Counted from the first letter of the stretch, positions 29,514 through 64,000 are shown. The stretch is DNA of 64,000 nt from Raja brachyura (GCA_963514005.1 OY740797.1:24676001-24740000); one strand, 5' to 3'. Notes: generated by a model not told the origin, from the sequence alone. Translations and numbers: made by a program.

Positions 29514-29518
29514 CTCAC
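27785..29518 (-). CDS. CR1 ORF2 reverse-transcriptase fragment (577 aa, uninterrupted, N-terminally truncated)
   Basis: Motifs KSPGPD, NYRPVSLTS, QHGF, YLDFQKAFDKV, GVPQGSVLGP, KFADDTK and RDLGV. There are no stops, but the true start and the endonuclease are absent. Confidence 0.85.
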   Translation of the reverse strand: MRRKRLVKTNVGPLQSETGELIMGNKDMADQLNNYFGSVFTKEDINNLPEIAGDRRSKEYLSEIQVSREVVLGKLNGLKADKSPGPDRLHPRVLKEVAPEIVDALVIIFQNSLDSGVVPEDWRVANVTPLFKKGGREKTGNYRPVSLTSVVGKLLESVIKDGIAAHLERGKIIGQSQHGFTKGKSCLTNLVEFFEDVTSSVDGGEPVDVLYLDFQKAFDKVPHKRLVYKLKAYGIGGSVLMWIENWLANRKQRVGVNGSFSQWQAVTSGVPQGSVLGPQLFTIYINDLDEGIEGNISKFADDTKLGGSVSCEEDARRMQGDLDRLGEWANVWQMQYNVDKCEVIHFGGKNRKTDYYLHGGRLGKGEMQRDLGVMVHQSLKVGMQVQQAVKKANGMLAFIAKGFECRSREVLLQLYRVMVRPHLVYCVQFWSPNLRKDIIAIEGVQRRFTRLIPGMSGLSYEQRLHRLGLYSLEFRRLRGDLIETYKILKGLDRLDAGRLFPMLGRSRTRGHSLRIRGKSFRTEMRRNFFTQRVVGLWNSLPQRVVEASSLDIFKRELDVALVAKGIRGYGQKAGTGY

Positions 29519-46143: not shown

Positions 46144-47008
46144 CAGTTTTATTTCTTGTTCTTTTGACTCCTGCCGTTGTTCACGAATCGAAAGCGATTT
46201 TAAAAAAAAATCAGTGACAACGGAGAACTCGGGATGGCGTTAAATTGGTCCCATCATCCAGGCGAATTTTGTTCGACACCCCACTCCTGCCTCAGCTCGG
46301 ATGGACGGCGACGATCGCAGAGCTGTAAATCTTGCTGATCGGAGGTCTGTTTGGATGACAGAGAAATACTCTCTTATGTACATCCTCGATTATTTGCCAG
46401 TTTTGACCATGATGTGAGCAGCTCGCAAATCACGAATGACCCTTTCAATTCGCCAATGAACTCAGCAGTGTGACCCTCTGGCGCATTGCGTGTCAAACGG
46501 CAGTAAACTGTAGCGAAGGCTGGGCATGGGGTGGAGGAGGAGGGGACTGAACTGTTTCGGGCTCCGTGTACTTGCAGATGACTTAGCTTGCTTCGCATCA
46601 TGGCGTGTTGAATGGAAAGTATTGGCGCAATCAAAGCAGGGAGCATCTGCGAAACGTCACTGTATTTTCACATAGGTCGAGCGTGGACAGCATATTCGCG
46701 ACGATCAGTACGAGGACATTGCTCAATAGATTGCATGGGCAAAAGCGCAATGGCAGCAATTTCTAGCTGCATTGAATTTCTGTAGTTGTTCAGCAAATGC
46801 TTTGTGAAGTTTTCGGCAATGTGTGAGCAGCCACTAACTTAACCTTTGATCCGCGTCAATGCGCAGAGAGGCATCTCATGCATGAGATGAGCATGAGCAG
46901 ACTCACTTTCCGGCACACCCACTGAACCCAAGCATACTCGCGGTATTCCTCTCTCAGTATTTATTCGACACTTGTTTCAGTCGACTGTTCTCTGCAGTTT
47001 TGCCGTGC

Positions 47009-47060
47009 ATGATGACACGTGTCTTACTGCAATTGATTGTTCTTCACGTCAGCTGCGCCG
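47009..47060 (+). CDS. Exon 1: signal peptide MMTRVLLQLIVLHVSCA
   Basis: ATG, hydrophobic core and small residues at the cleavage site. The phase-1 donor G|gtatat is the classic IgSF leader exon boundary. Confidence 0.85.
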
Positions 47061-50000
47061 GTATATTTTACTCTTATAGTCAAACCAGACAGTCAAACCG
47101 AGACTTAGTTATCAATTTATAAGCTTGCTGACCCCTTATCTTTATTTATTTTTCTCGTTACGTACAATTTTCTATTAATTTGGTCATTACCTCAGTTTAA
47201 TCCTAAGCCTTATAGTTTGATTTTTCGTTTCCCGACAGCTGGTGACAATGGTCTGTTCAACGTAACACAAGTTCCAGAAGCTGTTTTGATGCGGGGTGAC
47301 TCGGCAGTGCTTTACTGCATTTATCCAATCTTCTCAGACAACAGGCCGTTCAAAGTGCATTGGTGGAGAGATGGAGATAATAAATTCCTGGATGAAAGTG
47401 CAGACAAAAGAATCCAGTTTTATTTCCTGAGACGGGGAAGCGCTGTCTTACGGCTGGGGGACGTGACAGCGAAGGACGCCGGGCTCTATTTTTGCAGCTT
47501 GACGCGTACCAACGTTTTTAACGGGACTGGCACAAAGCTGGTAGTTTACGGTGAGTTTTGGGGAGAGGAGTAAGCCAGATCGGTCAACTTCACCAAGTCA
47601 AAGCGATAAGCTCAATCACGTTGAAGAAATTGCGCTTTCTTCATCATCTGTGTCCTTTGAAATAATATGATTTATGTGATGGGTTGGATAGTGTTTTTGA
47701 CGCAATTACCAAATAATCCGAATAGACTGATTGAGAGAGTAAATGACGCCTTCCACATCTTCTGCTTGACAGAATTATAAAACCTTTCGCGTATATTTTA
47801 GATTTGCTTCAACGCAGAGGGAATGGTGTTACTGAAACCAACGACACACGGCACAGGTAGTAGAGATTGAAAATATGTAGGGTTCCGAATGTGGTACTGA
47901 TCAAGGAGATTATTTTTTTTATTGATTTATTTGCAGCTGTTATATTTTTTATCTAAAGTGTAAGGAATTGCAAGTATAAGGAATTGCAAGTGTCAGGAAC
48001 CTTTCGCGTATATTTTAGAATTGCTTCAACGCAGAGTGAATGTTATTACTGAAACCAACGACACATGGCACAGGTAGTTGAGATTGAAAATATGTACGGT
48101 TCCGAATGTGGTACTGATCAAGGAGATTACTTAATTGATTTCGTTGGACCTGTCATCTTTGTAATCAAAATTGTAAGGAATTACAGAATCATAGAATCAT
48201 ACAACACAACAACTGGCCCGTTCTGCCCACGTCGTCTCTGCCGACGGTACTAATTGTATATGTTGATGCTGTTTGCCTGCATTAGGCCCATATCCCTCTA
48301 TAACTCTTCTGCGTAATTACCGGTCCAACGCAATTTAAATGTTATTATTGTACTGCACCCTCTCCGGTGGCAGATGTTCCAGGTGTGCAAACCTTCCTCT
48401 TTTACATTTTCCACTTTTACCTAAAAACCGTGCCTCATAGTGCGTGATTCCACCATTCTGGGAAAGAAAACTCCGCCTGTGTGGCCTCGATATTAAAAAA
48501 ATAACATTTACAAGATTACTCTTCTGCCTCCTATATTCTACTGAGAATAAACCAAGTTTACCAAATGCCTCGTTTTTTACTCATCATCTGTGTCTCGTTA
48601 TAACCAGGCCCCTCTATTTCAGTCAACATTCTGGTGAACGTCTTGTGTACTTGCTCAATTGGTACCATGTTAATCCGTATTATAGGTTTGGTCACATTTC
48701 TGGTTGTCCCGGATGCTGCTTGAAATTATATAGGAGCCGTGAAGCGAATCAATCATTGAGGGATAAAGATCGGTATTGTTACATTTAGTCTGAAGAAGGG
48801 TCTCGACCCGAAACGTCAACTTATCATTTTATCCAGAGATGCTGTCTGACCCGCTTTTTATGAGTTTTATGTCTACCTTCGGCTTAAACCAGCACCTCTA
48901 GTTCCTTCCTATGCATTGTTACATTAACATATATTTTCCGTTAACTTTCCACTTATGGTTGTAGCGATAGCAGCAATGGAAATAGAATTAAGATCATATA
49001 GATATTGAAGACGGTTTGTTTTTAAATGGAGCAAATGTACTTGTAGTTTGAATCTCAAGCCTATATTTTGTGTGGCTTACGCAGACGCTGATCACTGTGT
49101 GAGCGATGGAACGGGGAAGTGCCATTTTCATGTATGAATGTCATTGATATCGTCTCAGAGGCCTTTGCATACCATCCACAATTGCTGGGATAATTGTTCT
49201 CGAAGTAATGCAATACTTTCTTCTGTGCTTAATGGAACTAGCGAACTGTTCCCCTGGCCCAGGTGTACAATATGTTTTCACACAAGAACACACATTCTTC
49301 TGACCTTGTAAATTAATGATTATTTTTAACCTCAATTTACTTCTGAATAAATCTTCTGCCCGAGTTAGTTATTTTAACAACGAGAAAGAATATATTTGTA
49401 AAATGTTGATAGTCGAGCTGTTATTATGGATTACATTTTGTACAATTAAATCACCAAATTATAATTGAAATCGCGAAGACAATTAAACAAAATCAAGTTA
49501 ATGTTTTGGCTCCTAATGTCTCTGCACTGAGCGGAACGCATCATTTACATGCGCTGCGAGTAGAAACGGAAACGATATATTTATGAAGTAAGGTAACTGT
49601 TGTACAATAGACCGCAATTGTAAAATCAAGACATACGACGATGAGGTTTAAAAGGAAGGAAATTAGTCGTTAGATTATACCACACCAAGGAAAATACTTA
49701 ACAGTTTGAAATCACTGTAAGTGCATTGGTTATAAAACTAGGCTGAAAACACATATGGTTCAATTAAGTTTTTTTCGAGGTTGCAATGACATTTGATTCG
49801 TCACGAAAATTACGGGACTGGTGAAATAAAAAAAATCGTTTTATTTTCCAGACACCCCAACTCCTCTGAGCCTGACTACCATGCTGCCGGAGAACACATC
49901 GGTTACTCTGATTCTTGTTTGCAAAACAGCAACTTTTTTTCCTCTTGATCTGAATATTACTTGGTACAAAAATGGGTCAGATATTATACAGAACTTTGAG

Positions 50001-53000
50001 CCAAACAAAACGCAGACAACAGCAGGACTGTACGAAGCTTGGAGCTCCCTGACCGAGACAGACCATGTGGAGAGCGGGACAGTTTATACCTGCCAGGTGT
50101 CTCATATTTCTCTTCCGCATCCAACGAATATCAGTTATACTTTCTACAGTCGAGGTAAGAATAATGATACATTTTCGATGCAATTTGGCCACATACCCAA
50201 GATTACCTCAGGAAATGGTGTGGTTAATACACTATATTGTCCGTTTAGCACATGTATAAACGTTGGGATGTTGGATTAAGCACTTGCTGAAAGGTGGGGC
50301 ATTCTTGAGTGTTCAGGTGGCATATTTCCTGTTCCCAACGTTTTGACTTTGCGGAAGATGTTGGGACAAACGTCCATGCTTGTGTGTGTCTCATGAACGT
50401 TATTACAATCTGTTCCATCATGCATTATGGTCCGGGTTAAACCATAAATGAAGCACCAGATCATCACGAACGAAACAAACTAATGCCTAAAATATACTGC
50501 GAAGATGTTCGCTGGCAATCGCTTGATTATGAAAGTATATTTTGGTGCCAAAACTCCACGCTATGGCAAGATCTGGAATAATTGGACTTACATGTTCTGA
50601 GAGACAGGTCCTGCATGCATTTGGGGAGGCGTGGAGAAAGGAATTGCACATGCTGGTTTACACCGAAGAGAGACACAAAATGCTGGAGTAACTCAGCTGG
50701 ACAGGCAGCATCTCTAGATAGAAGGAATGCGTGACGTTTCGGGTCGAGACCATTCTTCAGTCCGGAAAAGGATCTCGACCCGAAACGTCACACATTCCTT
50801 CGATCCAGAGATGCTGCCTATCCCGCTGAGTTGCTCCAGCATTTTGTAGCTATCTATGCATTTGGGGAGGCGTGGACTGTTCGGGGATAGTCAGATTTTC
50901 TTCGTGCGTGGGAATTCGCGTTTTACGACTCTGAATACGGGGTTTGAAACGGTGACCATGAACATTGACGAGGACAGTGCGGTGTATTGCCTACTTAGAC
51001 TTTAGAATGGCATTTGATAAGGGTCTGGTTGACTAGTCTGACAGGTAAGTTCGTATTGGATCCAGGGCGAGCTTGTCAATTGGATACGGAATTCCCTTGA
51101 AAATGGGAAATTGCCTTAAAGATAGTGATGGTAGAGGCTTGATTTTATGACTAAATGTCTCTGACGAGTGCTATGCCACAGGGATCGGTGGTGGATCCAC
51201 TGTCTGTTTTCTTTCATATTAACGATTTGGATGTGCGTGCAAGGGTAGTTTGTGGATAGCACAAACAATTGTGGTTTAGTGGACTGTGAAGAGATTTATC
51301 AAAAATTACAACGTGATCTTAGTCAAGCGGGCGAATGGTCTGACAAATGACAAATGTCGTTTAAGACAAAATAGGACAGATATGCAGGTAGACTGGGAAA
51401 ATCAGATTGGTACTGGACCCAAAGAAAGGGACTTTGTAGAGTATTCTTTGAACACCTTGTATTGGAGCCTACCAGGGAGAATGCAATTCTGGATTTAGTG
51501 TAATGAAATGAACTGGATTTGATAATGGACCTCGAGGTTAATGGGCCATTAGGAGGCAGTGACCATAACATGGTCAGGTTTAATCTACAATTGGAGAGGG
51601 AGAAGAGTAGATCGGAGGTGTCAGTGTTGCAGTTGAATAAAGGGGACTATGGTGCCATGAGGGGGTAGCTGGCCAAAGTTGATTGGAAAGATACGCCAGC
51701 AGGGATGACAGTGGAACAAAAATGGCAGATGTTTCTATGAATAATACAGATGGTTCAGGATCAGTTAATTCCTAGGAGGAAGAAAGATTCCAAGGGGAGA
51801 AATGGCGGACAAGGCGGACAAGGGACGTCAGGCACAGTATAAATATTAAAGTGAAGAAGTACAACGTAGCAAAGATGAGCGGGAAACAAGAGGATTGGGT
51901 AATATTTCAAGAGCAACAGAAGATATCCAAAAAGACAATCCGGGGAGAAAAGATGAGGCACGAAGGTAAGCTAGCCAAGAACATAAAGGAGGATAGTAAA
52001 AGCTTCTTTAGGTATGTGAAGAGGAATGTATTTGTTAAGACCAAAGTTGGACCCTTGAAGACCGAAAAAGGTGAATTTATTATGGGGAACAAGGAAATGG
52101 CAGATTAGTTGAACAGGAACTTAGGATCTGTCTTCACTAAGGAGGACACGTTGGCATGTTGGCCTTTATAACAAGAGGAATCGAATATAGGAGCAAAGAT
52201 GTCCTTCTGCAGTTGTACAGAGCCCTAGTGAGACCACACCTGGGGTATTGTGTGCACTTTTGGTCCCTTAATTTGAGGAAGGACATTCTTGCGATTGAGG
52301 GAGTGCAGCGTAGGTATACAAGGTTAATTCCCGGGATGGCGGGACTGTCATATGCTGAGAGAATGGAGTAACTGGGCTTGTACACTCTGGAGTTTAGAAG
52401 GATGAGAGGGGTTCTCATTGAAACATATAAGATTGTTAAGGGCTTGGACACGTTAGAGGCAGGAAACATGTTCCCGATGTTGGGGGAGTCATAGAACCAG
52501 GGGACACAGTTTAAGAATAAGGAGTAAGCCATTTAGAACGAAGACGAGGAAACACTTTTTCTCACAGAGAGTGGTGAGTCTGGAATTCTCTGCCTCGGAG
52601 GGCGGTGGAGGCAGGTTCTCTGGATGCTTTCAAGAGAGAGCTAGATAGGGCTTTTAAAAATAGATGAGTCAGGGGATTTGGGGAGAAGGCAGGAACGGGG
52701 TACTGATTGGGGATGATCAGCCATGATCACATTGAATGGCAGTGCTGGCTCGAAGGGCCAAATGGCCTACTCCTGCACCTATTGTCTATTGTCTGTTGTC
52801 TATAAAAAAGATGGCAGAGCGATGGCGGATGTTGTGTGTCAGAGAGGCCTGGGCGCACAAGTACATGGTTTCATGGAAGTCTCTGGGGTGGATAGGGCGA
52901 CGAAGAAGTCATACAGCACATTTGTTTGAATCAGTCAGTGTATTGAGTGCATGAAGAATGCCACCGGTATAATAAATGTAAATAATGCACATTTGTGTAT

Positions 53001-56000
53001 ACTTCTTGTCGCCTTGCTGTTCGAAAGATGTCACCAAACTGTAAACAATGCAAAGGCGATTTACGAGGATGTGATTAGGTCAGATAGGTTTCAGTTATAA
53101 AGTAAGGTGGGGGTGGGGGGATGGGGGGGGGGAGGTTGTTGGCTTGGCCTTCCCCCCCCCCCCCCCCCCTAGTGTACAGGAGGCTGAACGTAAAACATAC
53201 AAGAGCACCGCACAGGAAAGGTCCCTTCATCCTACAATGATTGCACACAACATGATGCCAAGTTAAACTGGTCTCATCTGCCTGTACATAATCCATATCC
53301 CTCAATTCCCTGTACTTCCATGTGCCGGAAAGAACTGCAGATGCTGGTTTACACAAAGATAGACACAAAATGCTGGAATAACTCAGCGTGACAGACAGCA
53401 TCTCCGGATAGAAGGAATGGGTGACGTTTTGAGTCACGATCCTTCCTCGTGAGCCTCCTAAACGCCACTACCGTATCTGTCTCCACCACCCACCCCCCCC
53501 CCCCCCCCCCCCCTCGCAATCCGTCCCAGGATCTCGATACTCTTAGTAAAAATCGTGCCCCGCATATCTCCAAGAAACCTTCCCCATCTCAGCTTATAGC
53601 TATGCAGTCTAAGAATGACAATGTCAACCCCTGGAGAATGATCCTGGTGGTCTACCATATCCACGCCTCAAACAATTATTCAGGCCGACCTTTTGCATTC
53701 CCCAAAAGCCTCTTAAATGTCATTATTGTCCCTTTTTATCTTTGTATCTTTCTCCACTACCACGGATGGCAGCACATTACAGGCAGCAACCATGCTCTGT
53801 GTATAGCACTTGCCCGGCATATCTTCTTTAAACTTTGCCCATCCAACGTAAACATACGCCCTCTAGTCGTTGACTTTACACCAATAAAAAGGGCTCTACG
53901 ATTTGTGCCACATCTACGATTTATATACTTCCATCCATAATCCTTTCAGCCTGCACCGCTCTGGAAAAGACTATCAAATCTGTTCTAACCTCTCCTTATA
54001 AGCAATACCCTCTAATCTAGACAGCATCCTGGTTAAAGGCAGCACTGTGGCGCTGCTGGTGGAGGTACGGCATCATAGCGCTGGAAACCTGGGTTCAATC
54101 CTGATCTCGGGTGCCGTCTGTATGGAGGTTGCACGTTTTCGCTTTGACCACGTGGGGTTCGTGCCAGTGCTGCGGTTTCATCCCACATCCCAAATGATTT
54201 CGCACCATTGGATGTATAGATTAATTGGTCTCTGTAAAGTTGCCCACAATGTGTAGAGTATGGATGAGAAAATGCGATAATATAGAACAAGTGTGAATAA
54301 GTGATCAATGGTCAGCCTTGACTGTTTGGTCGGAATAGGCCTGTTTCAATGTTAACTGGCTTAAACTAAACCTCTTACCTCTTCACTAACCTCACCAAAG
54401 CTTCGACATGGATCCTCTAATGGGGCGATTAGAACTGCACACAATAGTCCAATTGTGGACACACTACACCCTATAAATCTGCAACATGATATATTGACTC
54501 TTATCCTCTATTCACCAATCAATGTAGGTAACAATACCACCCGTCTTCTTCACCACTCTATCTAATTGTGTTGCCCTTTCAGGGAGCTGTCGGCGGAGCC
54601 AAGACCTTTGCGACCAATCCGCTCAGCACCCAGCGAGATTCTTTTAACTTTACAAGTGATTCACTCATGCATGTTGAAGGATTTCTAAACTTGTTGAGGT
54701 ATAGGGGACGGTGGAAGACACCATTCCACAAAGTACTGCTGTGTGTCCTTCACTTAATTGCCATTATTCTTGATCCTTTATCCTCTCCATATTTTACTTT
54801 TTACATCGAGCCTAAATCCCAAGATTGCAGATTTCGCACCATTGGTTATAATTGACATTGTTCAAATGAATCACGGTACGCAATTCCAAGATCACTGACA
54901 CTATTTGTTAGAATCCAATTTGCAATGAATTCCAATGAAAAAGGAGGCAGGTTCCGCCCACGCGTAAACGAATCTATCAAATGATTTCAATTTAATTGAA
55001 TCACTGAGGCATTTGAACATTTTGTCATGTTTACCTGATCTGCCATTGTCATAATTGAAGAAAAATAACTGCTTTAGAAAACCATTGCCAGAATTTTTGC
55101 CAATGTTTTGAGGACACGCCGTTTCATGCCCGAATAATGAACATTGCTTGTACATTGGAAACACTTGCACATAATGGAGAATATCTAACAACCAAGTTAT
55201 AAAATAAAGATAGACACAGAAAGCTGGAGTAACTCAGCGGGACAGGCAGCATCTCTGGAGCGAAGGAATGGGTGACGTTTCGGGTCGAGACCCTTCTTCA
55301 GACCCGACCGAAACGTCACCCATTCCTTCTCTCCAGAGACGCTGCCTGTTCCGCTGAGTTACTACAGTTTTTTTGTGTCTATCTTCGGTTTTATGCAGCA
55401 TCTGTACTTCCTTCTTATAAAAGTTATAACATTAATTCGCGTTTGTCTAAATATTGGATAGATTTCTTTTGTAAAGAGGTAACAAGAAATTTTGAGGAAT
55501 GATTGCTGTAGCTGACGTCAATGAAGAATATTTGATAAAAAAAGATTCGACAAAGCTTCAATCAACATGTTGGTTATTAATGCTGTCGCTCATAGAATGA
55601 AACCAGTCAAGTAATCAATAAACCAGCTTTCAAGAAGGCATACGAAGGAAAGTAATGGAGAGAGTTACAGAGAAAAAAGCTGGATATAGAATGTTGCTCT
55701 TCAAGAATAAGACCCAGTGTAGTAATCAGTTTATGGTTCTTACAAAACTTGTAACCAAACATAAAAGCTGACCCATGTAAGTTGTCATTTGATGAATTTG
55801 ACGTAATATCACGAGACAAGCCAAACATTGATATGTGCGCGTCCTTTCACTAAAGCTGCGTGTCGTTCCGTTGCAAACCATTGCATATTTAATGTGTTAA
55901 TAGGAATCTTGACAAATTTAATCGATTCGTTACCTCAAATCAATAAAATAATTCATGGAATGCGTCTTGTGTGTGAGGGAGAGAGCGTGAATCTCCTGCC

Positions 56001-59000
56001 ATGCCTACCCCCCCCCCCCCCCCCCCCCCAGGTAGCTCATTGATATTCAACAAGAAAGGAACATTTTCGTCCATGTTCTGTATGGATTTTCGATGGTCGC
56101 CGTGCTACCCTGAATACAGCAGACGTCAATTCGCATTTAGAAGTAGACTACGAGGTCATGCACATCATTAGAATGAACGGTTCCAAAAAATCGGGTTTCC
56201 ATCGATATTCTGGATTAAAAAAACAAAGGATTACGTGTTTCTGTGAAGTACAGCACCTCATTTGTCACTAATGGTATTTCCACTGTTCTGTCACAGCGAG
56301 CGAAATCTACCTTCGTTTTTCCTACCACTCTCTTGAATTAATTTAAAAGCCTCTATTCGATTTGAGATCGGATTTCACAGCAAAATTCAACTTCCTTAAT
56401 ATTCCACGAATAATGCATCGTCTGTAATTCTGTCTCGAGCACACCAGGGTCGCCAAAAGGTAGAGATGTTTTCCAGCCACACTGTTGAATTACAAGGTGA
56501 AGAGTATATAACTTTTTATCCCTGCGCATTCGTGAACATTCCACAAAATGTCTTGTTGTACCGACACAGCTATAAACCACTACTTGTTATGATCTGCGAC
56601 ATATCCAAGCTGCATTCTTATATACCGTTTCGAATTGGTTGCAGGCAAATATTTGGTTCTTCTGCACCTTAACGATTCTTTGACTATATGTTATTTACAC
56701 ACAACTAGCATGCGACAACAATGATAAAACAGCAACTGCGTTCATGGGCAATGTTCCTGCATGTTTATTCCCCGTCGACGTTAACTCGATATAAACAAAG
56801 ACTGAATTATGCTTTTGAAGTAATAGCCTGTCCTATTATATAACACTCTAAATATATTACAACTGACCATTATTTTATTGTTTACAGTTTCATTACCCGA
56901 TAATCCATTTCATAACTGGATTTTTGGTTGCGCAGGAGCAGGATTGATACCTCTCATAATCATTATTTTCATTGTGAAACGAAAAGGTAAGACTCCGAAA
57001 CTTTTTGATCTCGGGATTGTTATGAAATTCAGCAATATTTTAGTTAGAAATACAGCTCGGAAACATGTGATTCAGCCCACCGAGTCGGCGCCGAGCAGCG
57101 ACCCTAGTATAATCACACTATCGTACACACACTAGGGAGAATTTACAATTATACCAAGCCATTTAATCTACACATCTGTACGTCTTTGGAGAGTGGGAGG
57201 ACACCGCAGATCCCGGAGAACATAATATTGGAGAGTTATATTGGATCGGACTGCATGCGGTTAGCTGGTCTGTGGTACATACGCCCCATCTCACTGAGTG
57301 TATCGTTTTTCGGAAGCTAACGTTTGAGTTAGTCACCGATTTGTTCATGAAGGATAGATGCTTGGTGTTTTGGGGCAGGTTGTAGGATAAGGGGTTGAGT
57401 CTGAGAAAATGGGTCGGTGATGCAGAAACTCATTCTGTGATTGAATGTGCTCCGACAACTCGAAGTGGACCAATATCCTGTAGGTTTTTAACAATTGGTA
57501 TCGTGAAATTAGTTTTGCAACATACATGTATACAAACTCAAAAGTTTAAAAAAATGTATATGCTGCTATATTTACTGTTTTCTACGATTCTTTGTATGGA
57601 CCAAGAGTTTTTTATTCTAAATTACCTCACTGTAGGGACGTGCAGAACATCGAAAGGACGTGCAGAGCATACAACGAAGGTAAGATATGTATAATACTGC
57701 ATATAGGTTCAAACAGCACTCGGACATCCTCCCAATTATTACCTTCGTTTGGATAATTACAAGATTCTACAAGTCAACTTGCGTGATGAAATTGGAGCAA
57801 AATGAAATTCCTCAGTAATGCCTTCAAATTCAAACACAGCTACTGTAGGCCCATTTGTGTACTTGATGTTTTTTAATGGAAGCATGGCGATAGAAATGTA
57901 AACTTAGGAGAAGGAATAAGCGATATGGTCCTTCGACCTTCCTTGGTCGTTCAATACGTTCATGGCTCATCCTGCCAATTTAGTGTCCCGCTCCTGCTTT
58001 CTCCCAATGTCGCTTGATCCCTGAGACTTGTTTTGCGCTGTAGTTCTCTATCAAGTTATAACAATGTTCACATCATTTTGAATATATTTCATAATTTTGA
58101 TTCGAGTGATTTGTGAAATAGATGTTCTTCTCTCCTGGAGAAGAAATCTGTCCCCATTACAGTTTGAAATAGCTTATCCCGTATTATTTTACAATGATTC
58201 CTGGTACTGGTTGTCCCATCAATGGGAACAACATAACTCCATTATATCTTTCATATACCGTGGATTTGTAAACAATTGTCTGGGCTGCCTTCTCATGCTT
58301 CCAATTTTTTGCGAAATTACATCAATGTAACCCAATGCATACGTTAGTCTTGAAACAGGCTATCAGGCTGTTGAAATCTCATTGTAACACCATCTTCACG
58401 GTCAAATAGACCAAATGTGCGCACACCTCTCCAGGAGAGCAGTCATCAAGGTCTATGCAAGTCGAGACAATCCTTTTCCGATAGCTTTTTTAATCGGAAT
58501 TTGGCATGCTGCTGGAATGTACGATGTTTAATTATGTCTATTGTAGTAACTTTATTGAAAATATCTTGATTCGTAGGAAAGAATTTTAACAAAATACTTT
58601 TTTTTAGACTAAGCATTGGGAACCCAATGAAGGAATTGTTTACAGTACTTTCCTTATCGCTGATGCAAAGCGATCTGCCGAAGATAAATATGCAGAACCG
58701 AGCACAATATATGCCCAGGTATGAGCAACATGCGCCATTTCATTGAGCAGCGATTGAATCACAGTTGAATGTAATTGAAACATTTATCTGAGTGCTTCGT
58801 TCGTAGCTTTGTCTAATTACGATTAACAAATTTCAGTCTCAAAAGGGGGGAAATCTCATCGGCAGAATTAATAGCCTTTGCTTTAATTAAAAAACAATTA
58901 TTTTTTCGTGAATAAGAAAGGTTATAATCCAAAATGCACCTGTAACTGAAATTCAGGTGGTGATAAGAGGGCACAATCTTGAATCTCTCCCGTGCTTCAG

Positions 59001-62000
59001 GTAAAAGTGCTGTCAAATTGTTTCGTGTAAACGTTTTGGGGAATTTAGACCCAACGACGAGGGAGGGCTGCCAACCAATTTTAAGTCAGGAACGAGTATG
59101 ACTCGGAAAGGAACCCACACGTGGCAGTGATCCCATTCAAACTTTGTTCTCTAGGCATGGAGATCAAAGATTGCTATGCGCTTATGTAATGGATGGGATG
59201 AATAGCTGCAGTTTACGTAGTAAATAGTGCACTGGTGAAGGAAATAACGGCTTACGGTTGGCAAGCAAATGCACTGATTTGACCTGAATGGTGTCAGGTG
59301 TCTGGAATTGGAACATTTGCTGGAACTGCACTCAGCTTGCCACATGAACGTCATTCTATCACATGCCCAAGTTATGCTTTGACGATGAGAAAATGTTTCG
59401 GAGTCAGTAGTTAGATAGCCTTTCGCAGAATACGCAGCCTACTCTTGTAGCTCTACTATTTATGTGGCTAATCCTCGTGCATTTGTGATCTACGATGAGT
59501 ACTAAAGAGGTGATGTTGGAGGATGCAGTGATCGCAATGCCACTGAATTTCAGGGTCATCGGTTGGACTCCATTTTTTGTGGTGTGACCCAACACCTTTA
59601 GTCTATCAGGTTGTGAAATTGCCAACAGGGATGGACTATTTGAATTTCTGAGAATTTGCAAGTGGAACGGAATATGGTGCAAACATTCAGTGAACACTCC
59701 AGTTTTGATTTAAGACGGACAGAAGGTAATTTATGATCAATTTAACATGGTTGCGCCTACGATACACCCCAGAATATTGCCCGTGGTGATGGTAACGCTC
59801 TCGGATAGTTCATCTGGAGCAATAACAACCAGTGCACCACGTGACTCCAATTATAAAGAACCCAATGATACTGTAATTGGAATATACCCATGATAGAGAT
59901 AGTGGAGGGAACATTCACCTGATTGATCTTTGCGGAGACTGGTTTTGCTACACGGGGAGATGTTATGAACATATATTGGAGTAGAGAGAATAAAGGTTGT
60001 TCACAAAAACCTGCAATATTTTACAGGCCGATAAATAGATGTTGATATTTATCCCGATTTCGTTGCTTAGAATCAGGCTTTGTAATCTCATAATGAGGAT
60101 ATAGCATTATTGCAGAGATAGCATTATTAACCAAGACTGATCGCTATAACATGATGTGGCAATTGACAATTCAGACACAATGAACAATCTGACAAGATAT
60201 GATGTCATTATTATATTAGGGAAGCAATGCATTTGAGGTTACTGCATGGTAAATTTCTTTTATATACAGTATAGTGTGTTTGATATCTGTAATTCGCTGT
60301 CGGGGGATGTGCTTGAATCAGATACAATAAGCGAGTTTGGTATTCCGACTGCGTATGCCTAGGTCATAGGTCACTAGCTATAAATCAGTCTTGGCAACCG
60401 TGTTGCTGCAATATGTGCCGGCTTGCATCTCATCCGTAGTCGGGTCGGGGTCGGCTCTCTGTCTGCTGTTGAGTTGTTGTTGGGGCATCCCCGTCCCCTC
60501 CCCGGTGTCCTGTCCCTGTCCGGAGGTGTCCAGGTGGCCCTGGGCTGGTGGGGCGGCCCCGGACTTGCCCCAGACAGAGCCGGATTGGTCCCAGCAGCCC
60601 TCCACCTCCACCCCCTCCCCTCAGTCCAACACCGAGATCCTGCTGAACATGGGCAGCTGTCGGCCCTGCTTGAATCCAGGTGACTCAGAGCTGCTGCTGC
60701 TGGAGTCGGCCTGGTTAGTGTCCCGTCGGTCCAGACATCTCGAGTGGTGGGGGGGGGGGGGGGGGGGAGAGAAAGTCCTAGGACTGCCCAGTCTCAACCC
60801 CTCCCCAGGCCCACCTGGTCTCCACCCCCCACCACCTGGTCTCCAACCCCCCCCCCCCCCCCACCCCGTCTCCCACTGAAAAATGACAGAAAATTGGACC
60901 AAACGTATACTCACTGTATCTATAGCGCAGAGATCTGTTTACTGTTATAGCTTACGACCTTTGACAAATCCCATCATTCCCTGCGTTTTTCGGAATACCG
61001 AACTCACTTATTTGCAATGTTTTAATGGCTTTTATACAGATACATCCACGGGCAAGCCATATGTTCCGAAACTGGCCATAAGTATAGATGGGCAAAAGGT
61101 CGGTATTATCACCGACTCTCTGACTGCAAAGCAACATGAGATAAAGATTAGTGGTAATATTTTAACACTACATTAGAGACACTAAAAGGCACTCCTGAGG
61201 CTATTGTTTATATTTTTACGTTTGGGGCGTTAGCCTGAGTGCCGACGCTGATATTGCTTTGCTCACACTGACTGGGGGGTTAGATGATTTCATGGAGATT
61301 TAATTGATAGCATACTTCTCCACACGTGCGCATTGCCTCGTGTAGGTCGATCATTTCACAAATTACGGCTGTTTGAAGTTTCGGGGGGAAAAAAGCCTGG
61401 TTCAGGGCCTAGAGGGTCAAACAGTCTTTACTTCAGTCTTTACTTGTGCTGTCACACCTAAAATGAATCTAAATATCACCGTTAATATTTGACTTCATTC
61501 AGAAATAACATCAGGTATCGAGTTGGGTTCCGTTTACTGCAGAATTCTCAAGACCCCTCAGTGAGAGTGGTCGGATGTTTTGCAAAGCCCGGGCATCCCA
61601 GCTGAAGGGGGCTTGTGGGAGGTGATGTGCAGCACGGTGACTGAAAAGATTGAGAAAGTTGCTGTGGTTACCATGCAGTCTTTCTGGGTTTGGTAGTCTT
61701 ATGAATGTTAGAATCGTGGGTTTCATTTTGTAGGCAATGTAAACTGTGGACCGTTTGCGAGGTAGTTAAATCTGAAAATAACCTTTCATACGCCAACCTC
61801 GCTAATAGTTGTAGTGTAGCTCTTTAAGCGGAAGTGTTTGAGGACTGGTCTCGTGATTTTCTCTTGCGGCATGTAATAGGGAGCCCCGCGTATTTGTTTA
61901 ATACAGAGTTCCCTTATATGAAGGGGATGGTCCCAATTACTACATCTGTAATGTCCCTTCTCTTCCTGGCTAGGGGGTGTGAGCCTGTAATTTTGTCCAG

Positions 62001-63031
62001 ATGCATCCACTAATAATTAAAATCTATCATAGCAGTTAGATCTATCTGGCAGTTTAATTTCGTTCATTGAGTTTCATTGTGTTTCACATGAAATGAAAGT
62101 CAGCAGGAAAATCTGTTATGTTGGCTAAGTCGACAGTGGTGCAATACAAAGGAAAGTCAAATTTAGAATGGAAATTAGTGTTTCAATGGGCCACTCCGTG
62201 ACAGTAAGAACAAAATATTGTGACCAGGTTACCATGCGCCACAGTTTGATGCATTAAACGGTGAATCAACAAGTAAGGATATTCGGTATTGGAAAATGTT
62301 TGAACTGATAAATTAGAGAAACATCAGAAAATGGTAAATAGAAAATGTTTTTCACTCGCTTGCATTTTTCGATGACACAGCAGAGAAGCTTAAAGAACGG
62401 AAAACATCCCAAGTGAGCATTTAATAAAATGCAGACAGAAGGCTTGCAAACGAGTCAGTGGCCAAATGAATAAAATATAACACATAACGGGGACCAGTAG
62501 AAGAAGCTGCCCCGTTCAATTGAACCGTAGGTAGTTGAATAATAGACACAAGAGACAACATTTACTTTCAATCCGATCAACTTTGGGAGATTATGCAGAT
62601 GAGGCCTTCAGCAACTATTTCCACGCAGGAACATTAAAAACAAATTGAATTGCCCTCGTTAGCAGTATATTTGATTTGGCTAGTCGCTAATGCATAGTCT
62701 TGTGTTTAGCCAATGATCACTGCACAACGCAGAGCAGCGAAAAATGAATCAATTTGTTCTTTCCCAGAAGGAAATATATTAATATAATAACATTTTTCAT
62801 ATTAGTAAAGGCATTTGGTATTTTGCTAACATTTACAATGTCCGTTACTGGCGGCAGTGGTGTATTTTTGGAAATATGTTGATGGTGTAATAATTATAAT
62901 AACTTGCTGATAACTTTCAGACAATGCAATCCGAATGTGATCCAAAGTTAACATATACTACTCTAAACATCGCTCGTCTAGAGACATCTATTAAATCCAG
63001 ATACGTTGAAGAAGACATGATATATGCCCAG
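47009..63031 (+). CDS. IgSF receptor gene: leader, VJ-type V domain, C1 domain, TM and ITIM-type tail (NCR3/SIRP-like architecture); 7 coding exons, 344 codons in the window, 3' end probably outside it
   Basis: Exons 47009-47060, 47239-47550, 49852-50154, 56888-56986, 57636-57679, 58608-58718 and 62921-63031 all have GT-AG boundaries. They join in one frame (intron phases 1,1,1,1,0,0) with no stop. Confidence 0.88.
47239..47550 (+). CDS. Exon 2: VJ-type Ig V-set domain
   Basis: Acceptor tttcccgacag and donor G|gtgagt. The protein has VTQ, B-strand LYC, C-strand VHWWR, F-strand DAGLYFC and a J-like G-strand FNGTGTKLVV. Confidence 0.95.
47781..48183. repeat. Tandem duplication (period 217 bp) in intron 2
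   Basis: The block aacctttcgcgtatattttaga...gtactgatcaaggagatta starts at both 47781 and 47998. Confidence 0.9.
48786..48914 (+). mobile_element. Short Penelope-terminus-like retroposon with hammerhead-like core
   Basis: ctgaagaagggtctcgacccgaaacgtc at 48790-48817, with an 11-bp TSD attgttacatt at 48775-48785 and 48915-48925. Confidence 0.75.
49852..50154 (+). CDS. Exon 3: Ig C1-set domain
   Basis: Acceptor ttattttccag and donor G|gtaaga. The C1 signatures are LVCKTATFFPLDLNITWYKNG and YTCQVSHISL. Confidence 0.95.
50636..50855. mobile_element. Palindromic Penelope-terminus-like retroposon
   Basis: Inverted arms of ~90 bp, with a 21-bp TSD atgcatttggggaggcgtgga at 50615-50635 and 50856-50876. 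Confidence 0.8.
51378..52800 (+). mobile_element. Internally deleted CR1 LINE in intron 3
   Basis: Same family as 26843-31411 (EGKLAKNIKEDSKSFFRYVKR). Near 52148 it jumps from the FTKEDT region straight to MLAFITRG, so the RT core is missing. The tail is ctattgtctattgtct. Confidence 0.88.
54037..54370 (+). mobile_element. V-SINE-like SINE
   Basis: Head ggcagcactgtggcgctgctggtggagg...gggttcaatcc and tail aaactaaac. Confidence 0.65.
55208..55418. mobile_element. Palindromic Penelope-terminus-like retroposon
   Basis: Near-perfect inverted arms agatagacac...gacgtttcgg and ccgaaacgtc...gtgtctatct. Confidence 0.8.
56888..56986 (+). CDS. Exon 4: stalk and transmembrane segment
   Basis: Acceptor ttgtttacag and donor G|gtaaga. 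It encodes (V)SLPDNPFHNWIFGCAGAGLIPLIIIIFIVKRK, a hydrophobic helix followed by a basic stop-transfer. Confidence 0.88.
57043..57225 (-). mobile_element. V-SINE-like SINE 3' fragment in intron 4
   Basis: Matches the 3' half of the copies at 6752 and 22855. Confidence 0.65.
57636..57679 (+). CDS. Exon 5: juxtamembrane cytoplasmic exon (G)TCRTSKGRAEHTTK
   Basis: Acceptor cctcactgtag and donor AAG|gtaaga. The 44-nt length converts phase 1 to phase 0, as exon 6 requires. Confidence 0.72.
58608..58718 (+). CDS. Exon 6: cytoplasmic tyrosine-motif exon TKHWEPNEGIVYSTFLIADAKRSAEDKYAEPSTIYAQ
   Basis: Acceptor ctttttttttag and donor CAG|gtatga. It is 111 nt, phase 0-0, and carries an ITIM-like IVYSTF and a terminal TIYAQ. 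Confidence 0.82.
62921..63031 (+). CDS. Exon 7: cytoplasmic ITIM exon TMQSECDPKLTYTTLNIARLETSIKSRYVEEDMIYAQ
   Basis: Acceptor taactttcag and donor CAG|gtaagt. It is 111 nt, phase 0-0, carries the canonical ITIM LTYTTL and is paralogous to exon 6. Confidence 0.82.
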
Positions 63032-63120
63032 GTAAGTGTAATAAGAGCCAATTAATGGAACAACTATGAATCAAAGATGAATGCATGTTAACCAATTATC
63101 TTTGTAAGATGTTTGTCGTT

Positions 63121-64000
63121 ACATAGATACATAGATACATAGACAATAGGTGCAGGAGTAGGCCATTTGGTCCTTCGAGCCAGCACCACCATTCAATGTG
63201 ATCATGGCTGATCATCTACAATCAGTACCCCGTTCCTGCCTTCTCCCCATATCCCTTGATTCCGCTAGTCCAAGAGGTCTATCTAACTCTTTTTTGAATG
63301 CATCCAGTGAATCGGCCTCCATTACCTTCTGAGTCAGAAAATTCCACATATTCACAGCCCTTTGGGTGAAAAAGTTTTCTTCATCTCAGTTCTAAATGGT
63401 CTACCCCTTATTCCTAAACTGTGGCCTCTGGTTCTGGACTCTCCCAAAATCGGGAACATGTTTCCAGCATCTAGCATGTCAAATACCTTAATAATTTTGC
63501 ATGTTTCTATAAGATCCCCTCTCATCCTTCTAAATTCAAATGAGTACAAGCCCAGTCGCTCCAGTCCCTCCATCCCGGGAATTAACCTCGTGAACCGAAG
63601 CTGCACTCCCTCAATAGCAAGAATGTCCTTCATCAAATTAGGTGACCAAAACTGCACACAATACTCCAGGTGTGGTCTCACCAGGGCCCTATACAACTGC
63701 CTATTTGCTCCTATACTCAACTCCTCTCGTTATGAAGGCCAACATGCCATTAACTTTCTTCGCTGCTTGCTGTACTTGCATGCTTCAGTGACTGATGTGC
63801 AAGGACACCCAGGTCTCGGTGTACTGCCCCTTTTCCTAACCTGACAGGTTTCAGATAATAATCTGCCATCCTGTTCTTGCCACCAGTGGATAACCTCATA
63901 TTTATCCACATTATGCTGCATTGCCATGCATCTGCCCACTCACCCAACCTGTCCAAGTCACTCTGCAAACTCTTCACAGTTCACACTGCAACCGAGATGT
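63121..64000 (-). mobile_element. CR1 LINE 3' part (runs off the window)
   Basis: A (catagata)n tail and RT sequence QLYRALVRPHLEYCVQFWSPNLMKDILAIEGVQ. Confidence 0.9.

What the first reader, a model, noticed from the sequence alone, without database searches (positions are those of the whole stretch)
47009..63031. Germline-joined VJ + C1 receptor: an antigen-receptor-shaped, non-rearranging inhibitory receptor
Seen: an intact spliced ORF encodes leader, V, C1, TM and a Tyr-motif tail. The V exon contains its own J-like strand (YFC-SLTRTNVF-NGTGTKLVV, the G-x-G-T-x-L-x-V pattern) with no RSS or intervening DNA. A true C1-set exon follows, and there are 7 N-glycosylation sequons. The TM has no charged residue. 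Established: C1-set domains are largely restricted to Ig, TCR, MHC/B2M, tapasin, SIRP and B7H6-type proteins. Single-exon VJ domains occur in NKp30, the CD28/CTLA4 family, SIRP and NITR. A V(J)-C1-TM chain is the layout expected of the pre-RAG-insertion ancestor of Ig/TCR. Inference: this belongs to a poorly characterised cartilaginous-fish VJ-C1 receptor family that signals by phosphatase recruitment rather than CD3/ITAM adaptors. Automated annotation would probably label it only SIRP-like or NCR3-like.
Basis: partly seen in the sequence, partly recalled or inferred. Interest (0 to 1): 0.85.

Follow-up and report, generated by a model that had tools for sequence, protein, structure and literature searches.

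The report
Skate VJ-C1 inhibitory immune receptor gene
This is a real, apparently intact skate gene for a cell-surface immune receptor with an antibody-like V domain (J strand built in), one C1 domain and an inhibitory-type tail; it belongs to a large shark, ray and chimaera gene family that databases hold only under misleading automatic names.

Summary
On the + strand I find seven exons with canonical splice sites and matching phases: leader, V, C1, TM, a 44-nt linker and two 111-nt tyrosine-motif exons. The V exon carries its own J-like strand. No RSS-like site lies nearby, and genomic contigs of four runs show V and J contiguous in DNA. Pfam calls V-set and C1-set. There are 7 sequons, the TM is uncharged, and the tail has one canonical ITIM (LTYTTL).

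Three things do not hold or stay open. I count six junctions, not seven. The 3' end is undefined inside the window. No RNA run was available.

The gene falls in a conserved lineage with predicted proteins of two other skates (87-93% identical), rays, sharks and a chimaera. That lineage sits inside a family of at least 78 stored proteins with inhibitory, charged-TM and other forms.

The V domain is nearest NKp30 by Foldseek (3Di plus sequence) and by identity. The C1 resembles MHC and Ig C1 domains.

Phosphatase recruitment is inferred only. The scan already found this family several times elsewhere in this genome. Eight literature searches found no description. Verdict: new member of a known kind.

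The parts
47009..47060 (+). Leader exon (coding part): MMTRVLLQLIVLHVSCA plus the first base of a split codon; donor G|gtatat
47239..47550 (+). V(J) exon, phase 1-1, 103 whole codons; canonical Cys26, Trp41 and Cys85; 2 N-glycosylation sequons
   Evidence: Pfam V-set E 1.4e-8. AlphaFold2 pLDDT 91. 76 of 87 residues identical to Leucoraja P0158.
47517..47546 (+). Germline J-like G strand FNGTGTKLVV inside the V exon (GxGTxLxV, with one extra residue between F and the first G; carries an NGT sequon)
   Evidence: The motif is present in 64 of 73 family V domains, and the N-G-T/S-G sequon in 58 of 73.
49852..50154 (+). C1-set exon, phase 1-1; Cys23, Trp37 and Cys80; YTCQVSH motif; 5 sequons
   Evidence: Pfam C1-set E 1.8e-12. 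PDB best matches are IgM constant domains and MHC class I alpha3. Foldseek top matches are MHC class II beta2. 92 of 99 identical to P0158 and 85 of 91 to P0200.
56888..56986 (+). Stalk and transmembrane exon, phase 1-1; the hydrophobic core at about 56917-56976 has no charged residue; followed by KRK
   Evidence: 30 of 32 identical to Amblyraja P0200, whose model splices C1 to this exon in the same way.
57636..57679 (+). 44-nt cytoplasmic linker exon (TCRTSKGRAEHTTK); changes phase 1 to 0; acceptor ctgtag|GG, donor AAG|gtaaga
   Evidence: 8 of 14 identical to the same position in P0200.
58608..58718 (+). 111-nt tyrosine-motif exon A, phase 0-0 (..IVYSTF.. ..STIYAQ); both motifs depart from the ITIM/ITSM consensus
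   Evidence: 13 of 37 identical to exon B, E 0.001.
62921..63031 (+). 111-nt tyrosine-motif exon B, phase 0-0; canonical ITIM LTYTTL at 62948-62965, then ..MIYAQ; donor CAG|gtaagt
   Evidence: 22 of 37 identical to Mobula P0157 and 21 of 37 to Hypanus P0199.
63032..63055 (+). Possible read-through end (VSVIRAN, stop TAA 63053-63055) if the donor at 63032 is not used; otherwise the last exon lies beyond the window
   Evidence: no AATAAA or ATTAAA signal and no convincing terminal exon in 63001-64000

Best explanation
A functional, non-rearranging type I membrane receptor gene of a skate.

Anatomy: signal peptide, one V domain whose G strand is a germline J-like sequence, one C1-set domain, a short stalk, an uncharged transmembrane helix, and a cytoplasmic tail built from repeated 37-residue tyrosine-motif exons.

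Origin: it is the skate representative of one conserved lineage (chimaera, sharks, rays, skates) inside a multigene chondrichthyan VJ-C1 family. That family also has charged-TM (activating-type) members and other forms.

Proposed mode of action:
- the V domain binds a still unknown ligand;
- a Src-family kinase phosphorylates the ITIM tyrosine (LTYTTL) and possibly the neighbouring TxYAQ-type tyrosines;
- SH2-domain phosphatases of the SHP-1/SHP-2 type are recruited and damp activation of the cell that carries the receptor, as in SIRP-alpha.

Shown: the gene anatomy, the domain types, the germline VJ, and the family and its distribution. Inferred: expression, ligand binding, phosphorylation and phosphatase recruitment.
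For: Gene anatomy:
- Exon borders, phases and open frames.
- V-set and C1-set by Pfam.
- Confident single-domain models: pLDDT 91 and 88.5.

Splice junctions in relatives:
- The V-to-C1 junction is the same in the predicted Leucoraja protein P0158.
- The C1-to-TM-to-linker junctions are the same in the predicted Amblyraja protein P0200.

Germline state of the V exon:
- It is contiguous with both introns in genomic contigs of 4 of 4 runs.
- It stays open in all of them: of 11 listed variants, 7 are non-synonymous, 4 synonymous, none a stop.

Place in the family:
- C1 tree: window + Leucoraja + Amblyraja, SH-aLRT 97; with Mobula and Hypanus, 99.
- V tree: window + Leucoraja, 99. A 7-row clade with Mobula, Heterodontus, Heptranchias and Callorhinchus has 97 and follows the species order.
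- Census of 78 stored proteins that carry the family C1 domain: 25 with ITIM/ITSM-type tails, 13 with a charged residue in the TM, 19 with a TM but no such motif, 21 without a TM or partial.

Likeness to SIRP-alpha:
- The nearest full-length relative, P0001, lies next to SIRP-alpha clusters in the ESM Atlas (0.96; 204 and 202 of 256 features).
- SIRP-alpha 2wng matches the family profile across V plus C1 in one stretch (E 6.2e-31).
- SIRP-alpha's ITIM/SHP mechanism is taken from PMC12975943 (passages).
Against: - No RNA run holds the stretch. All 6 listed holders carry 0.71-0.88 of the words of a mostly intronic stretch, so they are DNA. Expression and all junctions therefore remain predictions.
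- The 3' end is not defined in the window.
- Only 1 of the 4 positioned tyrosine motifs fits the ITIM consensus. Exon A's motifs are degenerate.
- The Amblyraja model P0200 ends after the linker exon in a short exon (ARRMNE) with no tyrosine motif. I did not find that exon in the window.
- The window's C1 branch (0.065) is longer than those of the two annotated skates (0.012 and 0.017). It may be a diverging paralogue.
- A tail-only search with P0115 residues 262-406 found only 2 in-family proteins among 221 candidates. Homology of the tail to SIRP-alpha is not shown.
Confidence: 0.7

Rival explanations
1. It is the skate orthologue of SIRP-alpha itself: a member of the SIRP family, not merely SIRP-like.
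For: - NCBI names many family members PTPNS1-like.
- ESM Atlas nearest named clusters for P0001 are SIRP-alpha (0.96).
- SIRP-alpha 2wng aligns over V plus C1 with the family profile.
- The tail uses paired tyrosine motifs. The likeness to SIRP-alpha's motif pairs is recalled, not tested.
Against: - SIRPs have one V-set and two C1-set domains (PMC12975943). Here one C1 exon is found, and tblastn finds no second one in the 6.7-kb intron before the TM exon.
- In the PDB profile search, IgA heavy chain and UrIg2 score above SIRP-alpha.
- The V domain's best sequence-aware structural matches are NKp30, not SIRP.
- The tail-only search reached no SIRP.
Confidence: 0.1
2. It is an unexpressed or decaying paralogue (pseudogene in the making) beside functional family members.
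For: - No RNA holder.
- Not present as an identical protein in the searched collections; the nearest are 87-93% identical proteins of other skates.
- Longer terminal C1 branch than the two annotated skate proteins.
- Degenerate motifs in exon A, and no defined terminal exon or poly(A) signal.
Against: - All seven exons are open, with canonical AG/GT borders and compatible phases.
- All structural residues of V and C1 are kept.
- The V exon is open in four runs.
- C1 variants are mostly synonymous: 3 of 4 listed.
Confidence: 0.12
3. It is a ligand or adhesion molecule of the B7-H6 (NCR3LG1) kind, not a signalling receptor.
For: - The V-C1-TM layout is shared with B7-H6.
- NCBI names several family members 'NCR3 ligand 1-like' or 'CD276 homolog'.
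- A conserved subclade of 19 proteins has TM tails without tyrosine motifs.
Against: - This gene and its nearest full-length relatives (P0001, P0156, P0157, P0199) carry LxYxxL motifs.
- The V domain has a J-like strand and matches NKp30, the receptor, not its ligand chain, in PDB sequence and Foldseek searches.
- The family shows the inhibitory versus charged-TM split typical of paired receptors.
Confidence: 0.06
4. It is a germline-joined copy of a rearranging Ig light chain or TCR gene, of the kind cartilaginous fish are known to carry.
For: - The joined VJ exon is followed by a C1 exon.
- Some family members are auto-named 'immunoglobulin lambda-1 light chain-like'.
- By geometry alone, antibody V domains fit the V model best (Z 13.8-15.0, rmsd 1.5-2.0 A).
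Against: - Sequence likeness to antibody and TCR V domains is weak: single-domain E values around 1e-3.
- It has a TM without the charged residues of antigen-receptor chains, and an ITIM tail.
- The J-like strand is germline in 64 of 73 family V domains across many species.
- No RSS-like site lies nearby.
Confidence: 0.02

Closest known systems
SIRP-alpha (PTPNS1/SHPS-1) and the SIRP paired-receptor family
   Same: - Non-rearranging V domain with a J-like strand, followed by C1-set domain(s), an uncharged TM and a tail with ITIM-type tyrosines.
- The family contains inhibitory and charged-TM forms.
- ESM Atlas features of P0001 are nearest SIRP-alpha clusters.
- 2wng matches the family profile over V plus C1.
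   Different: - One C1 domain instead of two.
- The V domain is nearer NKp30 than SIRP in sequence-aware comparison.
- Tail homology is not demonstrable.
- The ligand is unknown.
- All family members that I looked up are chondrichthyan.
NKp30 (NCR3)
   Same: - Single-exon VJ-type V domain.
- NKp30 structures are Foldseek ranks 1-3 for the V model (E 2.6e-8 to 5.9e-8, 27-31% identity).
- NKp30 aligns over residues 4-102 in the sequence search (E 1.4e-3).
- Xenopus 'NCR3' proteins are among the nearest V hits outside cartilaginous fish (P0099, E 6.6e-9).
   Different: - NKp30 has no C domain.
- From recall, NKp30 has a charged TM residue and signals through ITAM adaptors. This gene has a C1 domain, an uncharged TM and an ITIM.
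- In the V tree the family forms its own clade (SH-aLRT 96), apart from the Xenopus NCR3-like rows.
- By geometry alone NKp30 is not among the 50 best rows.
PRARP (non-rearranging VJ-C1 genes of chicken and other non-mammalian vertebrates; Fu et al. 2019)
   Same: VJ plus C1 plus TM layout without rearrangement. The layout is recalled.
   Different: No PRARP sequence was available to me, so the relationship is untested. An earlier scan note (s1-881054) reports a separate PRARP-like cluster on another piece of this genome. If that is right, the present family is a different one.
UrIg / UrIg2 (elasmobranch non-rearranging antibody-like genes)
   Same: - Single-exon VJ domain followed by C1-type domains, in cartilaginous fish.
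- UrIg2 (9dmx) is the second-best PDB match of the family profile (E 5.1e-36).
- UrIg2 also matches the C1 exon alone (E 3.9e-9).
   Different: - UrIg has three C domains and is secreted. UrIg2 has nine or more C domains and forms disulfide-linked dimers. No ITIM is mentioned: 0 occurrences in PMC12227049.
- This gene has one C1, no stalk cysteine and an inhibitory-type tail.
Ig light chains / TCR chains
   Same: V(J)-C1 ectodomain. The V model superposes on antibody V domains at rmsd 1.5-2.0 A over 94-99 residues. The C1 domain is a true C1-set domain.
   Different: No V/J split and no RSS. No charged TM residues. An ITIM tail. Low sequence similarity.

Membership tests
Chondrichthyan VJ-C1 receptor family (unnamed; RefSeq predictions only) | V domain with WW(K/R)xG in strand C, DxGxYxC, and an NGTG(S/T)xLxV germline J strand | tested here: met
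   The window V exon aligns throughout and keeps all nearly invariant columns. It lies inside the family V clade (SH-aLRT 96).
Chondrichthyan VJ-C1 receptor family (unnamed; RefSeq predictions only) | One C1-set domain starting PPTPL-like, with CxTAxFxP, TWYKNG, GLYE and YTCxVSH | tested here: met
   The window C1 exon scores 133.9 bits against the family C1 profile, within the range of members. Alignments.
Chondrichthyan VJ-C1 receptor family (unnamed; RefSeq predictions only) | Tail made of about 37-residue exons carrying LxYxxL ... TxY(A/S)(Q/E) | tested here: met
   Exon B is 22 of 37 identical to Mobula P0157. Exon A is a weaker copy.
SIRP family | Ectodomain of one V-set and two C1-set domains | tested here: not met
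   tblastn with the window's own exons and with 25 family proteins finds only one C1 exon in the window. The feature itself is from PMC12975943.
SIRP family | ITIM-bearing tail (alpha form) that recruits SHP-1/SHP-2 | tested here: inconclusive
   One canonical ITIM, LTYTTL, is present. Recruitment cannot be tested here. The tail-only homology search found no SIRP.
SIRP family | Groups with SIRPs in sequence comparison | tested here: inconclusive
   ESM Atlas puts P0001 next to SIRP-alpha clusters. In the PDB profile search, Ig heavy chains and UrIg2 score higher than SIRP-alpha. No tree with SIRP sequences could be built.
NKp30 (NCR3) | Single VJ-type V domain as the whole ectodomain | tested here: not met
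   A C1-set exon follows the V exon.
NKp30 (NCR3) | V domain of NKp30 type | tested here: inconclusive
   Foldseek ranks 1-3 are NKp30. The VIA-align second look ranks antibody V domains first, and NKp30 is not among the 50 rows shown. The family V clade is separate from the Xenopus NCR3-like rows.
NKp30 (NCR3) | Charged TM residue for ITAM adaptors (recalled feature) | tested here: not met
   No K, R, D or E in the TM core.
Rearranging antigen receptors (Ig/TCR) | Separate V and J segments flanked by RSS | tested here: not met
   V and J lie in one exon. There are 0 RSS-like sites in 46500-50400. V and J are contiguous in genomic contigs of 4 runs.
PRARP | Sequence relationship to chicken PRARP genes | not testable with these tools
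   No PRARP sequence or paper was held. Only citations were seen.
UrIg/UrIg2 | VJ followed by three or more C1-type domains; dimer; no inhibitory tail | tested here: not met
   One C1 exon and an ITIM tail here. The UrIg features are from PMC12227049 passages.
MHC-linked or MHC-paralogon VJ genes | Linkage to the MHC or a paralogous region | not tested
   The other 47 kb of the window hold only repeats. The scan's own notes on MHC genes are all on other pieces.

The most novel reading that the evidence does not exclude
The family, and this conserved lineage in particular, descends directly from the non-rearranging VJ-C1 receptor stock of the proto-MHC era. On this reading it is an 'NKp30 that kept its C1 domain': sister to NKp30 and close to the stock from which UrIg and the rearranging antigen receptors arose. 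It would also have been working as a SIRP-like inhibitory self-recognition checkpoint since before chimaeras and elasmobranchs split.
Probability: 0.15. Interest if true: 0.8.

Novelty: new member of a known kind. Interest (0 to 1): 0.45.

Why it matters
Non-rearranging VJ-C1 genes are the material from which the origin of antibodies and T-cell receptors is reconstructed. The published candidates are UrIg/UrIg2, NKp30 and PRARP.

Cartilaginous fish carry a second, large set of such genes. These join an NKp30-like V domain to a true C1 domain and, in many members, to SIRP-like inhibitory tails or charged transmembrane anchors. Databases scatter them under five or more wrong names. The two closest skate models are truncated: one lacks the leader and runs into an intron, and the other starts inside C1.

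A correct gene model for one conserved lineage gives three things:
- a clean entry point for expression work;
- a starting point for ligand hunting with V-C1-Fc proteins;
- material for domain trees that would show where the family sits relative to NKp30, SIRP, PRARP and UrIg.

For this single gene the gain is mainly annotation.

Tried and rejected
1. RNA evidence. The look-up of sequencing runs (kind rna) listed 6 runs of 2 studies, none on record as RNA. All hold 0.71-0.88 of the words of a mostly intronic stretch. Read laying on 4 of them therefore showed only genomic contigs. That is useful for germline contiguity and variants, and useless for splicing.

2. The eighth exon and seventh junction.
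- A scan for phase-compatible exons between the tail exons gave nothing credible.
- A stretch at 61762-61815 (..ENNLSYANL.., then a stop) looks like a family motif. It does not align with exons A or B and was not found by tblastn. I set it aside as a possible relic or chance.

3. Terminal exon.
- No match to the ray terminal peptide and no AATAAA/ATTAAA in 63001-64000.
- The Amblyraja end ARRMNE was not found, even allowing up to 2 mismatches.

4. Tail homology to SIRP-alpha. The region search with P0115 residues 262-406 gave 2 of 221 candidates, both in-family. The likeness of the motif pairs to SIRP-alpha's remains recall.

5. Range outside cartilaginous fish.
- Searches (15 of 15; 37 of 38 from named chondrichthyan species, 1 unnamed) are word-prefiltered, so they cannot show absence elsewhere.
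- The exhaustive V search lists only 150 of 288 hits.

6. 'NKp30-like V'. This is supported by Foldseek, but not by the geometry-only second look.

7. Synteny with the MHC. Not testable from the window. The scan's notes gave no linked MHC gene.

8. Literature. Eight searches found no description of this family.
- Not held: Ohta 2019 (PMC6761025), UrIg 2023 (PMC10530332) and Flajnik 2012 (PMC3709836).
- Fu 2019 was seen only as a reference entry.
- Supplements are closed. Those of PMC12227049 and PMC10751288 may list further VJ-C1 genes.

9. Joined model. Each exon went in alone. Full-length comparisons used natural database proteins.

Full report
**What is there.** The window is vertebrate-like DNA: 64,000 bases, no N, CpG observed/expected 0.50. 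Reading the + strand from 46900 on, I find the following exons.

| Exon | Coordinates | Phase | Notes |
|---|---|---|---|
| Leader | 47009-47060 | ends in phase 1 | ATGATG..., donor G\|gtatat |
| V | 47239-47550 | 1-1 | acceptor cccgacag\|CT, donor TAC G\|gtgagt |
| C1 | 49852-50154 | 1-1 | acceptor ttattttccag\|AC, donor CGA G\|gtaaga |
| Stalk/TM | 56888-56986 | 1-1 | acceptor gtttacag\|TT, donor AAA G\|gtaaga |
| Linker | 57636-57679 | 1 to 0 | 44 nt; acceptor ctgtag\|GG, donor AAG\|gtaaga |
| Tyrosine exon A | 58608-58718 | 0-0 | 111 nt |
| Tyrosine exon B | 62921-63031 | 0-0 | 111 nt |

That makes seven exons and six junctions. 63031 is a donor site (CAG|gtaagt), not a stop. If the donor is not used, the frame runs seven more codons to TAA at 63053-63055. 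Otherwise the last exon lies beyond the window. There is no AATAAA or ATTAAA and no convincing terminal exon in 63001-64000.

**Domains.**
- Pfam gives V-set (E 1.4e-8, 35.3 bits, cut-off 26) for the V exon and C1-set (E 1.8e-12, 47.9 bits, cut-off 21) for the next exon. It gives nothing for the TM exon or exon B.
- The V exon reads ...DAGLYFC SLTRTNV FNGTGTKLVV Y. This is the GxGTxLxV pattern of a J segment, with one extra residue between the F and the first G, inside the same exon.
- A loose RSS scan (heptamer with at most 1 mismatch, 12 or 23 +/-1 spacer, nonamer with at most 3 mismatches) found 0 sites in 46500-50400 on either strand, against 12 in the whole window.
- There are 7 sequons, 2 in V and 5 in C1.
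- The TM core WIFGCAGAGLIPLIIIIFIV has no charged residue.
- Exon B carries one canonical ITIM (LTYTTL) and a distal MIYAQ.
- Exon A carries IVYSTF and TIYAQ, which depart from the ITIM and ITSM consensus. A and B are 13 of 37 identical (E 0.001).

**Folds.** Each exon was folded alone, with a family alignment. The V model has mean pLDDT 91.0 and the C1 model 88.5.
- Foldseek against the PDB puts NKp30 at ranks 1-3 for V (E 2.6e-8 to 5.9e-8, 27-31% identity). Shark VNAR, antibody V domains and CD79b follow.
- The geometry-only second look ties antibody VH/VL, PD-1 and VNAR at Z 13.8-15.0 (rmsd 1.5-2.1 A over 94-99 residues) and does not show NKp30 among its 50 rows. The fold is therefore a standard antigen-receptor-type V domain. 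The NKp30 lead comes from the sequence-aware score.
- For C1 the top matches are MHC class II beta2 domains (E from 1.9e-6).
- By sequence the C1 exon matches IgM constant domains (3.8e-15), MHC class I alpha3, IgA, SIRP-gamma (1.4e-10), SIRP-alpha (8.2e-10) and UrIg2 (3.9e-9).

**Germline state.** No RNA run was on offer. The 6 listed runs (2 studies) hold 0.71-0.88 of the words of a 3.1-kb stretch that is four fifths intron, so I take them for DNA. Laid on 46950-50250, 4 of 4 runs gave contigs that carry the V exon, J strand included, in one piece with its flanking introns: 47205-47573 in three runs and 46950-47892 in the fourth.
- None of the 15 joints shown lies at an exon border. They sit in repeats at about 47836-48794 and in the intron at 49636-49831. 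A further 25 joints were not shown.
- Of 11 listed variants in the V exon, 7 change the residue, 4 are silent and none is a stop.
- Of 4 listed variants in the C1 exon, 1 changes the residue.
- 26 further variants were not shown. Contigs at 90% likeness may include close paralogues. I read these counts only as 'open in other individuals, V more variable than C1'.

**Relatives.**
- An exhaustive HMMER search of 1.84 billion representatives with the V exon found 288 proteins at E <= 0.001, of which 150 were listed. The best are P0001 (Heptranchias, 59% identity in V) and P0002 (Mobula, 55%).
- Word-indexed searches with P0001, and with a 32-row family alignment, returned 15 of 15 and 37 of 38 proteins from named chondrichthyan species; the remaining one has no species name. 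These two searches are prefiltered and cannot show absence elsewhere.
- Of 30 proteins looked up by exact sequence, the 25 with the family's V domain (23 with the family C1 as well, 2 V-only) are all from sharks, rays, skates or Callorhinchus. The other five are a three-V protein of Heterodontus, two turtle multi-VJ 'pIgR-like' proteins, a Xenopus 'NCR3' and a Bombina protein. The last four are the nearest V hits outside cartilaginous fish.
- NCBI's names for family members are PTPNS1-like, tapasin-related-like, tapasin-like, Ig lambda-1-like, NCR3 ligand 1-like, CD276 homolog, H-2 class I-like, HLA-DO beta-like and uncharacterized.

Two skate models are closest.

| Model | Species and name | Length | Identity to the window | What it confirms | How it is incomplete |
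|---|---|---|---|---|---|
| P0158 | Leucoraja erinacea, 'tapasin-related protein-like' | 223 aa | V 76 of 87; C1 92 of 99 | splices V to C1 as I do | starts at an internal Met and runs through the C1 donor into the intron |
| P0200 | Amblyraja radiata, 'H-2 class I alpha chain-like' | 145 aa | C1 85 of 91; TM 30 of 32; linker 8 of 14 | splices C1 to TM to linker as I do | ends in a short exon (ARRMNE) that I did not find here |

. No identical protein turned up, so this copy is either unannotated or from a species without annotation in these collections.

**Place in the family.** I built profiles of the family V and C1 domains. 78 of 202 stored proteins carry the family C1 (65-142 bits), and the other 124 have no match at E <= 1e-5. 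Both trees were quick IQ-TREE runs with SH-aLRT only and few columns.
- C1 tree, 77 rows: window + Leucoraja + Amblyraja 97; with Mobula and Hypanus 99; with three shark rows, Callorhinchus P0008 and a six-row sister subclade only 82.
- V tree, 125 rows: window + Leucoraja 99. A seven-row clade with Mobula, Heterodontus, Heptranchias and Callorhinchus has 97, in species order. All family V domains together have 96, apart from the Xenopus NCR3-like, turtle and Heterodontus three-V rows. The tool warned that long branches meet at that split.
- The gene therefore belongs to one lineage kept since chimaeras and elasmobranchs parted.
- A rough census of the 78 proteins gives 25 with ITIM/ITSM-type tails, 13 with a charged residue in the TM, 19 with a TM but no such motif and 21 without a TM or partial. 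The 19 are mostly one conserved subclade with a Cys- and Lys-rich tail.
- The J motif is present in 64 of 73 complete V domains, and the N-G-T/S-G sequon in 58 of 73.
- In each species the looked-up members sit on one large contig.
- The scan's earlier notes place further members from 4.5 Mb before to 0.13 Mb after this window.

**How it probably works.** The layout is that of an inhibitory member of a paired-receptor family: ligand-binding V on a C1 pedestal, an uncharged TM, and an ITIM.
- The family profile matches SIRP-alpha (2wng) over V plus C1 in one stretch (E 6.2e-31). IgA1 heavy chain (6.3e-38) and UrIg2 (5.1e-36) score higher.
- The ESM Atlas puts the nearest full-length relative, P0001, beside SIRP-alpha clusters (0.96).
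- SIRP-alpha's mechanism is ITIM phosphorylation by Src-family kinases followed by recruitment of SHP-1/SHP-2 (PMC12975943, passages). It is the best model.
- None of this is shown for the skate protein. A tail-only search found no relative outside the family.

**Compared with what is known.**
- Single-exon VJ domains are listed for CD79, NITR, SIRP, CD8, NKp30 and PRARP (PMC11599192, passage).
- VJ-C1 genes are discussed as remnants of the antigen-receptor precursor, with UrIg and UrIg2 as the leading candidates (PMC10751288 and PMC12227049, passages).
- UrIg and UrIg2 differ from this gene: they have three or more C domains, are secreted or form dimers, and no ITIM is mentioned.
- SIRPs have two C1 domains. 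NKp30 has none.
- PRARP could not be compared, because neither its papers nor its sequences were held. An earlier scan note reports a separate PRARP-like cluster elsewhere in this genome (untested).
- Eight literature searches found no paper on this family. Supplements were closed, and three key papers were not held.

**Verdict.** The gene is a correct and useful annotation of one conserved member of a large family. That family is uncharacterised but already predicted, and the scan has met it several times in this genome. Its architecture is a variation on SIRP, NKp30 and PRARP themes, not a new kind. Expression, the 3' end, the ligand and the signalling remain open.

Noticed in passing
window 985-6504 (- strand): Apparently full-length LINE. 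An 859-aa ORF carries endonuclease (E 5.4e-14) and reverse transcriptase (E 7.3e-39) domains. It is followed in frame context by a 384-aa ORF and preceded by a 361-aa coiled-coil-like ORF1 candidate.
   Followed up: partly
window 27785-29518 (- strand) and 36419-37048 (+ strand): A 577-aa reverse-transcriptase ORF (RVT_1, E 6.8e-33) and a 209-aa tyrosine-recombinase fragment (Phage_integrase, E 5.6e-9; Crypton- or DIRS-like by recall). Related RT tails recur at 14510-14962, 21759-22355, 52156-52371 and 63352-63720. I saw no other host gene in the 47 kb upstream of the receptor.
   Followed up: partly
window 48171-48392 and 48726-48947 (intron between V and C1): Two short stretches with contig word depth of thousands to over a million in all four runs, with many joints and loose ends at 48784-48820. 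They look like very high-copy interspersed repeats.
   Followed up: no
window 49636-49831: In three runs of one study, one contig each skips 194 bases of the intron and ends 20 bases before the C1 acceptor. The same contig carries three silent C1 variants (49872, 49877, 49889). This is a second haplotype or a close paralogue.
   Followed up: no
window 61762-61815: An open stretch ..VVKSENNLSYANLANSCS.., followed by a stop, resembles the family's '..ENNLTYAAL..' tail motif. It may be the relic of a third tyrosine-motif exon, or chance. It does not align with exons A or B.
   Followed up: partly
window 60378-60950 and 26233-26872: GC-rich low-complexity stretches that give long Pro/Gly-rich ORFs on both strands. 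They look like simple-repeat artefacts, not genes.
   Followed up: no
proteins P0158 (Leucoraja erinacea) and P0200 (Amblyraja radiata): The public models of the two closest skate relatives are truncated and misnamed ('tapasin-related protein-like', 'H-2 class I alpha chain-like'). One lacks the leader and runs into the intron after C1. The other starts inside C1.
   Followed up: yes
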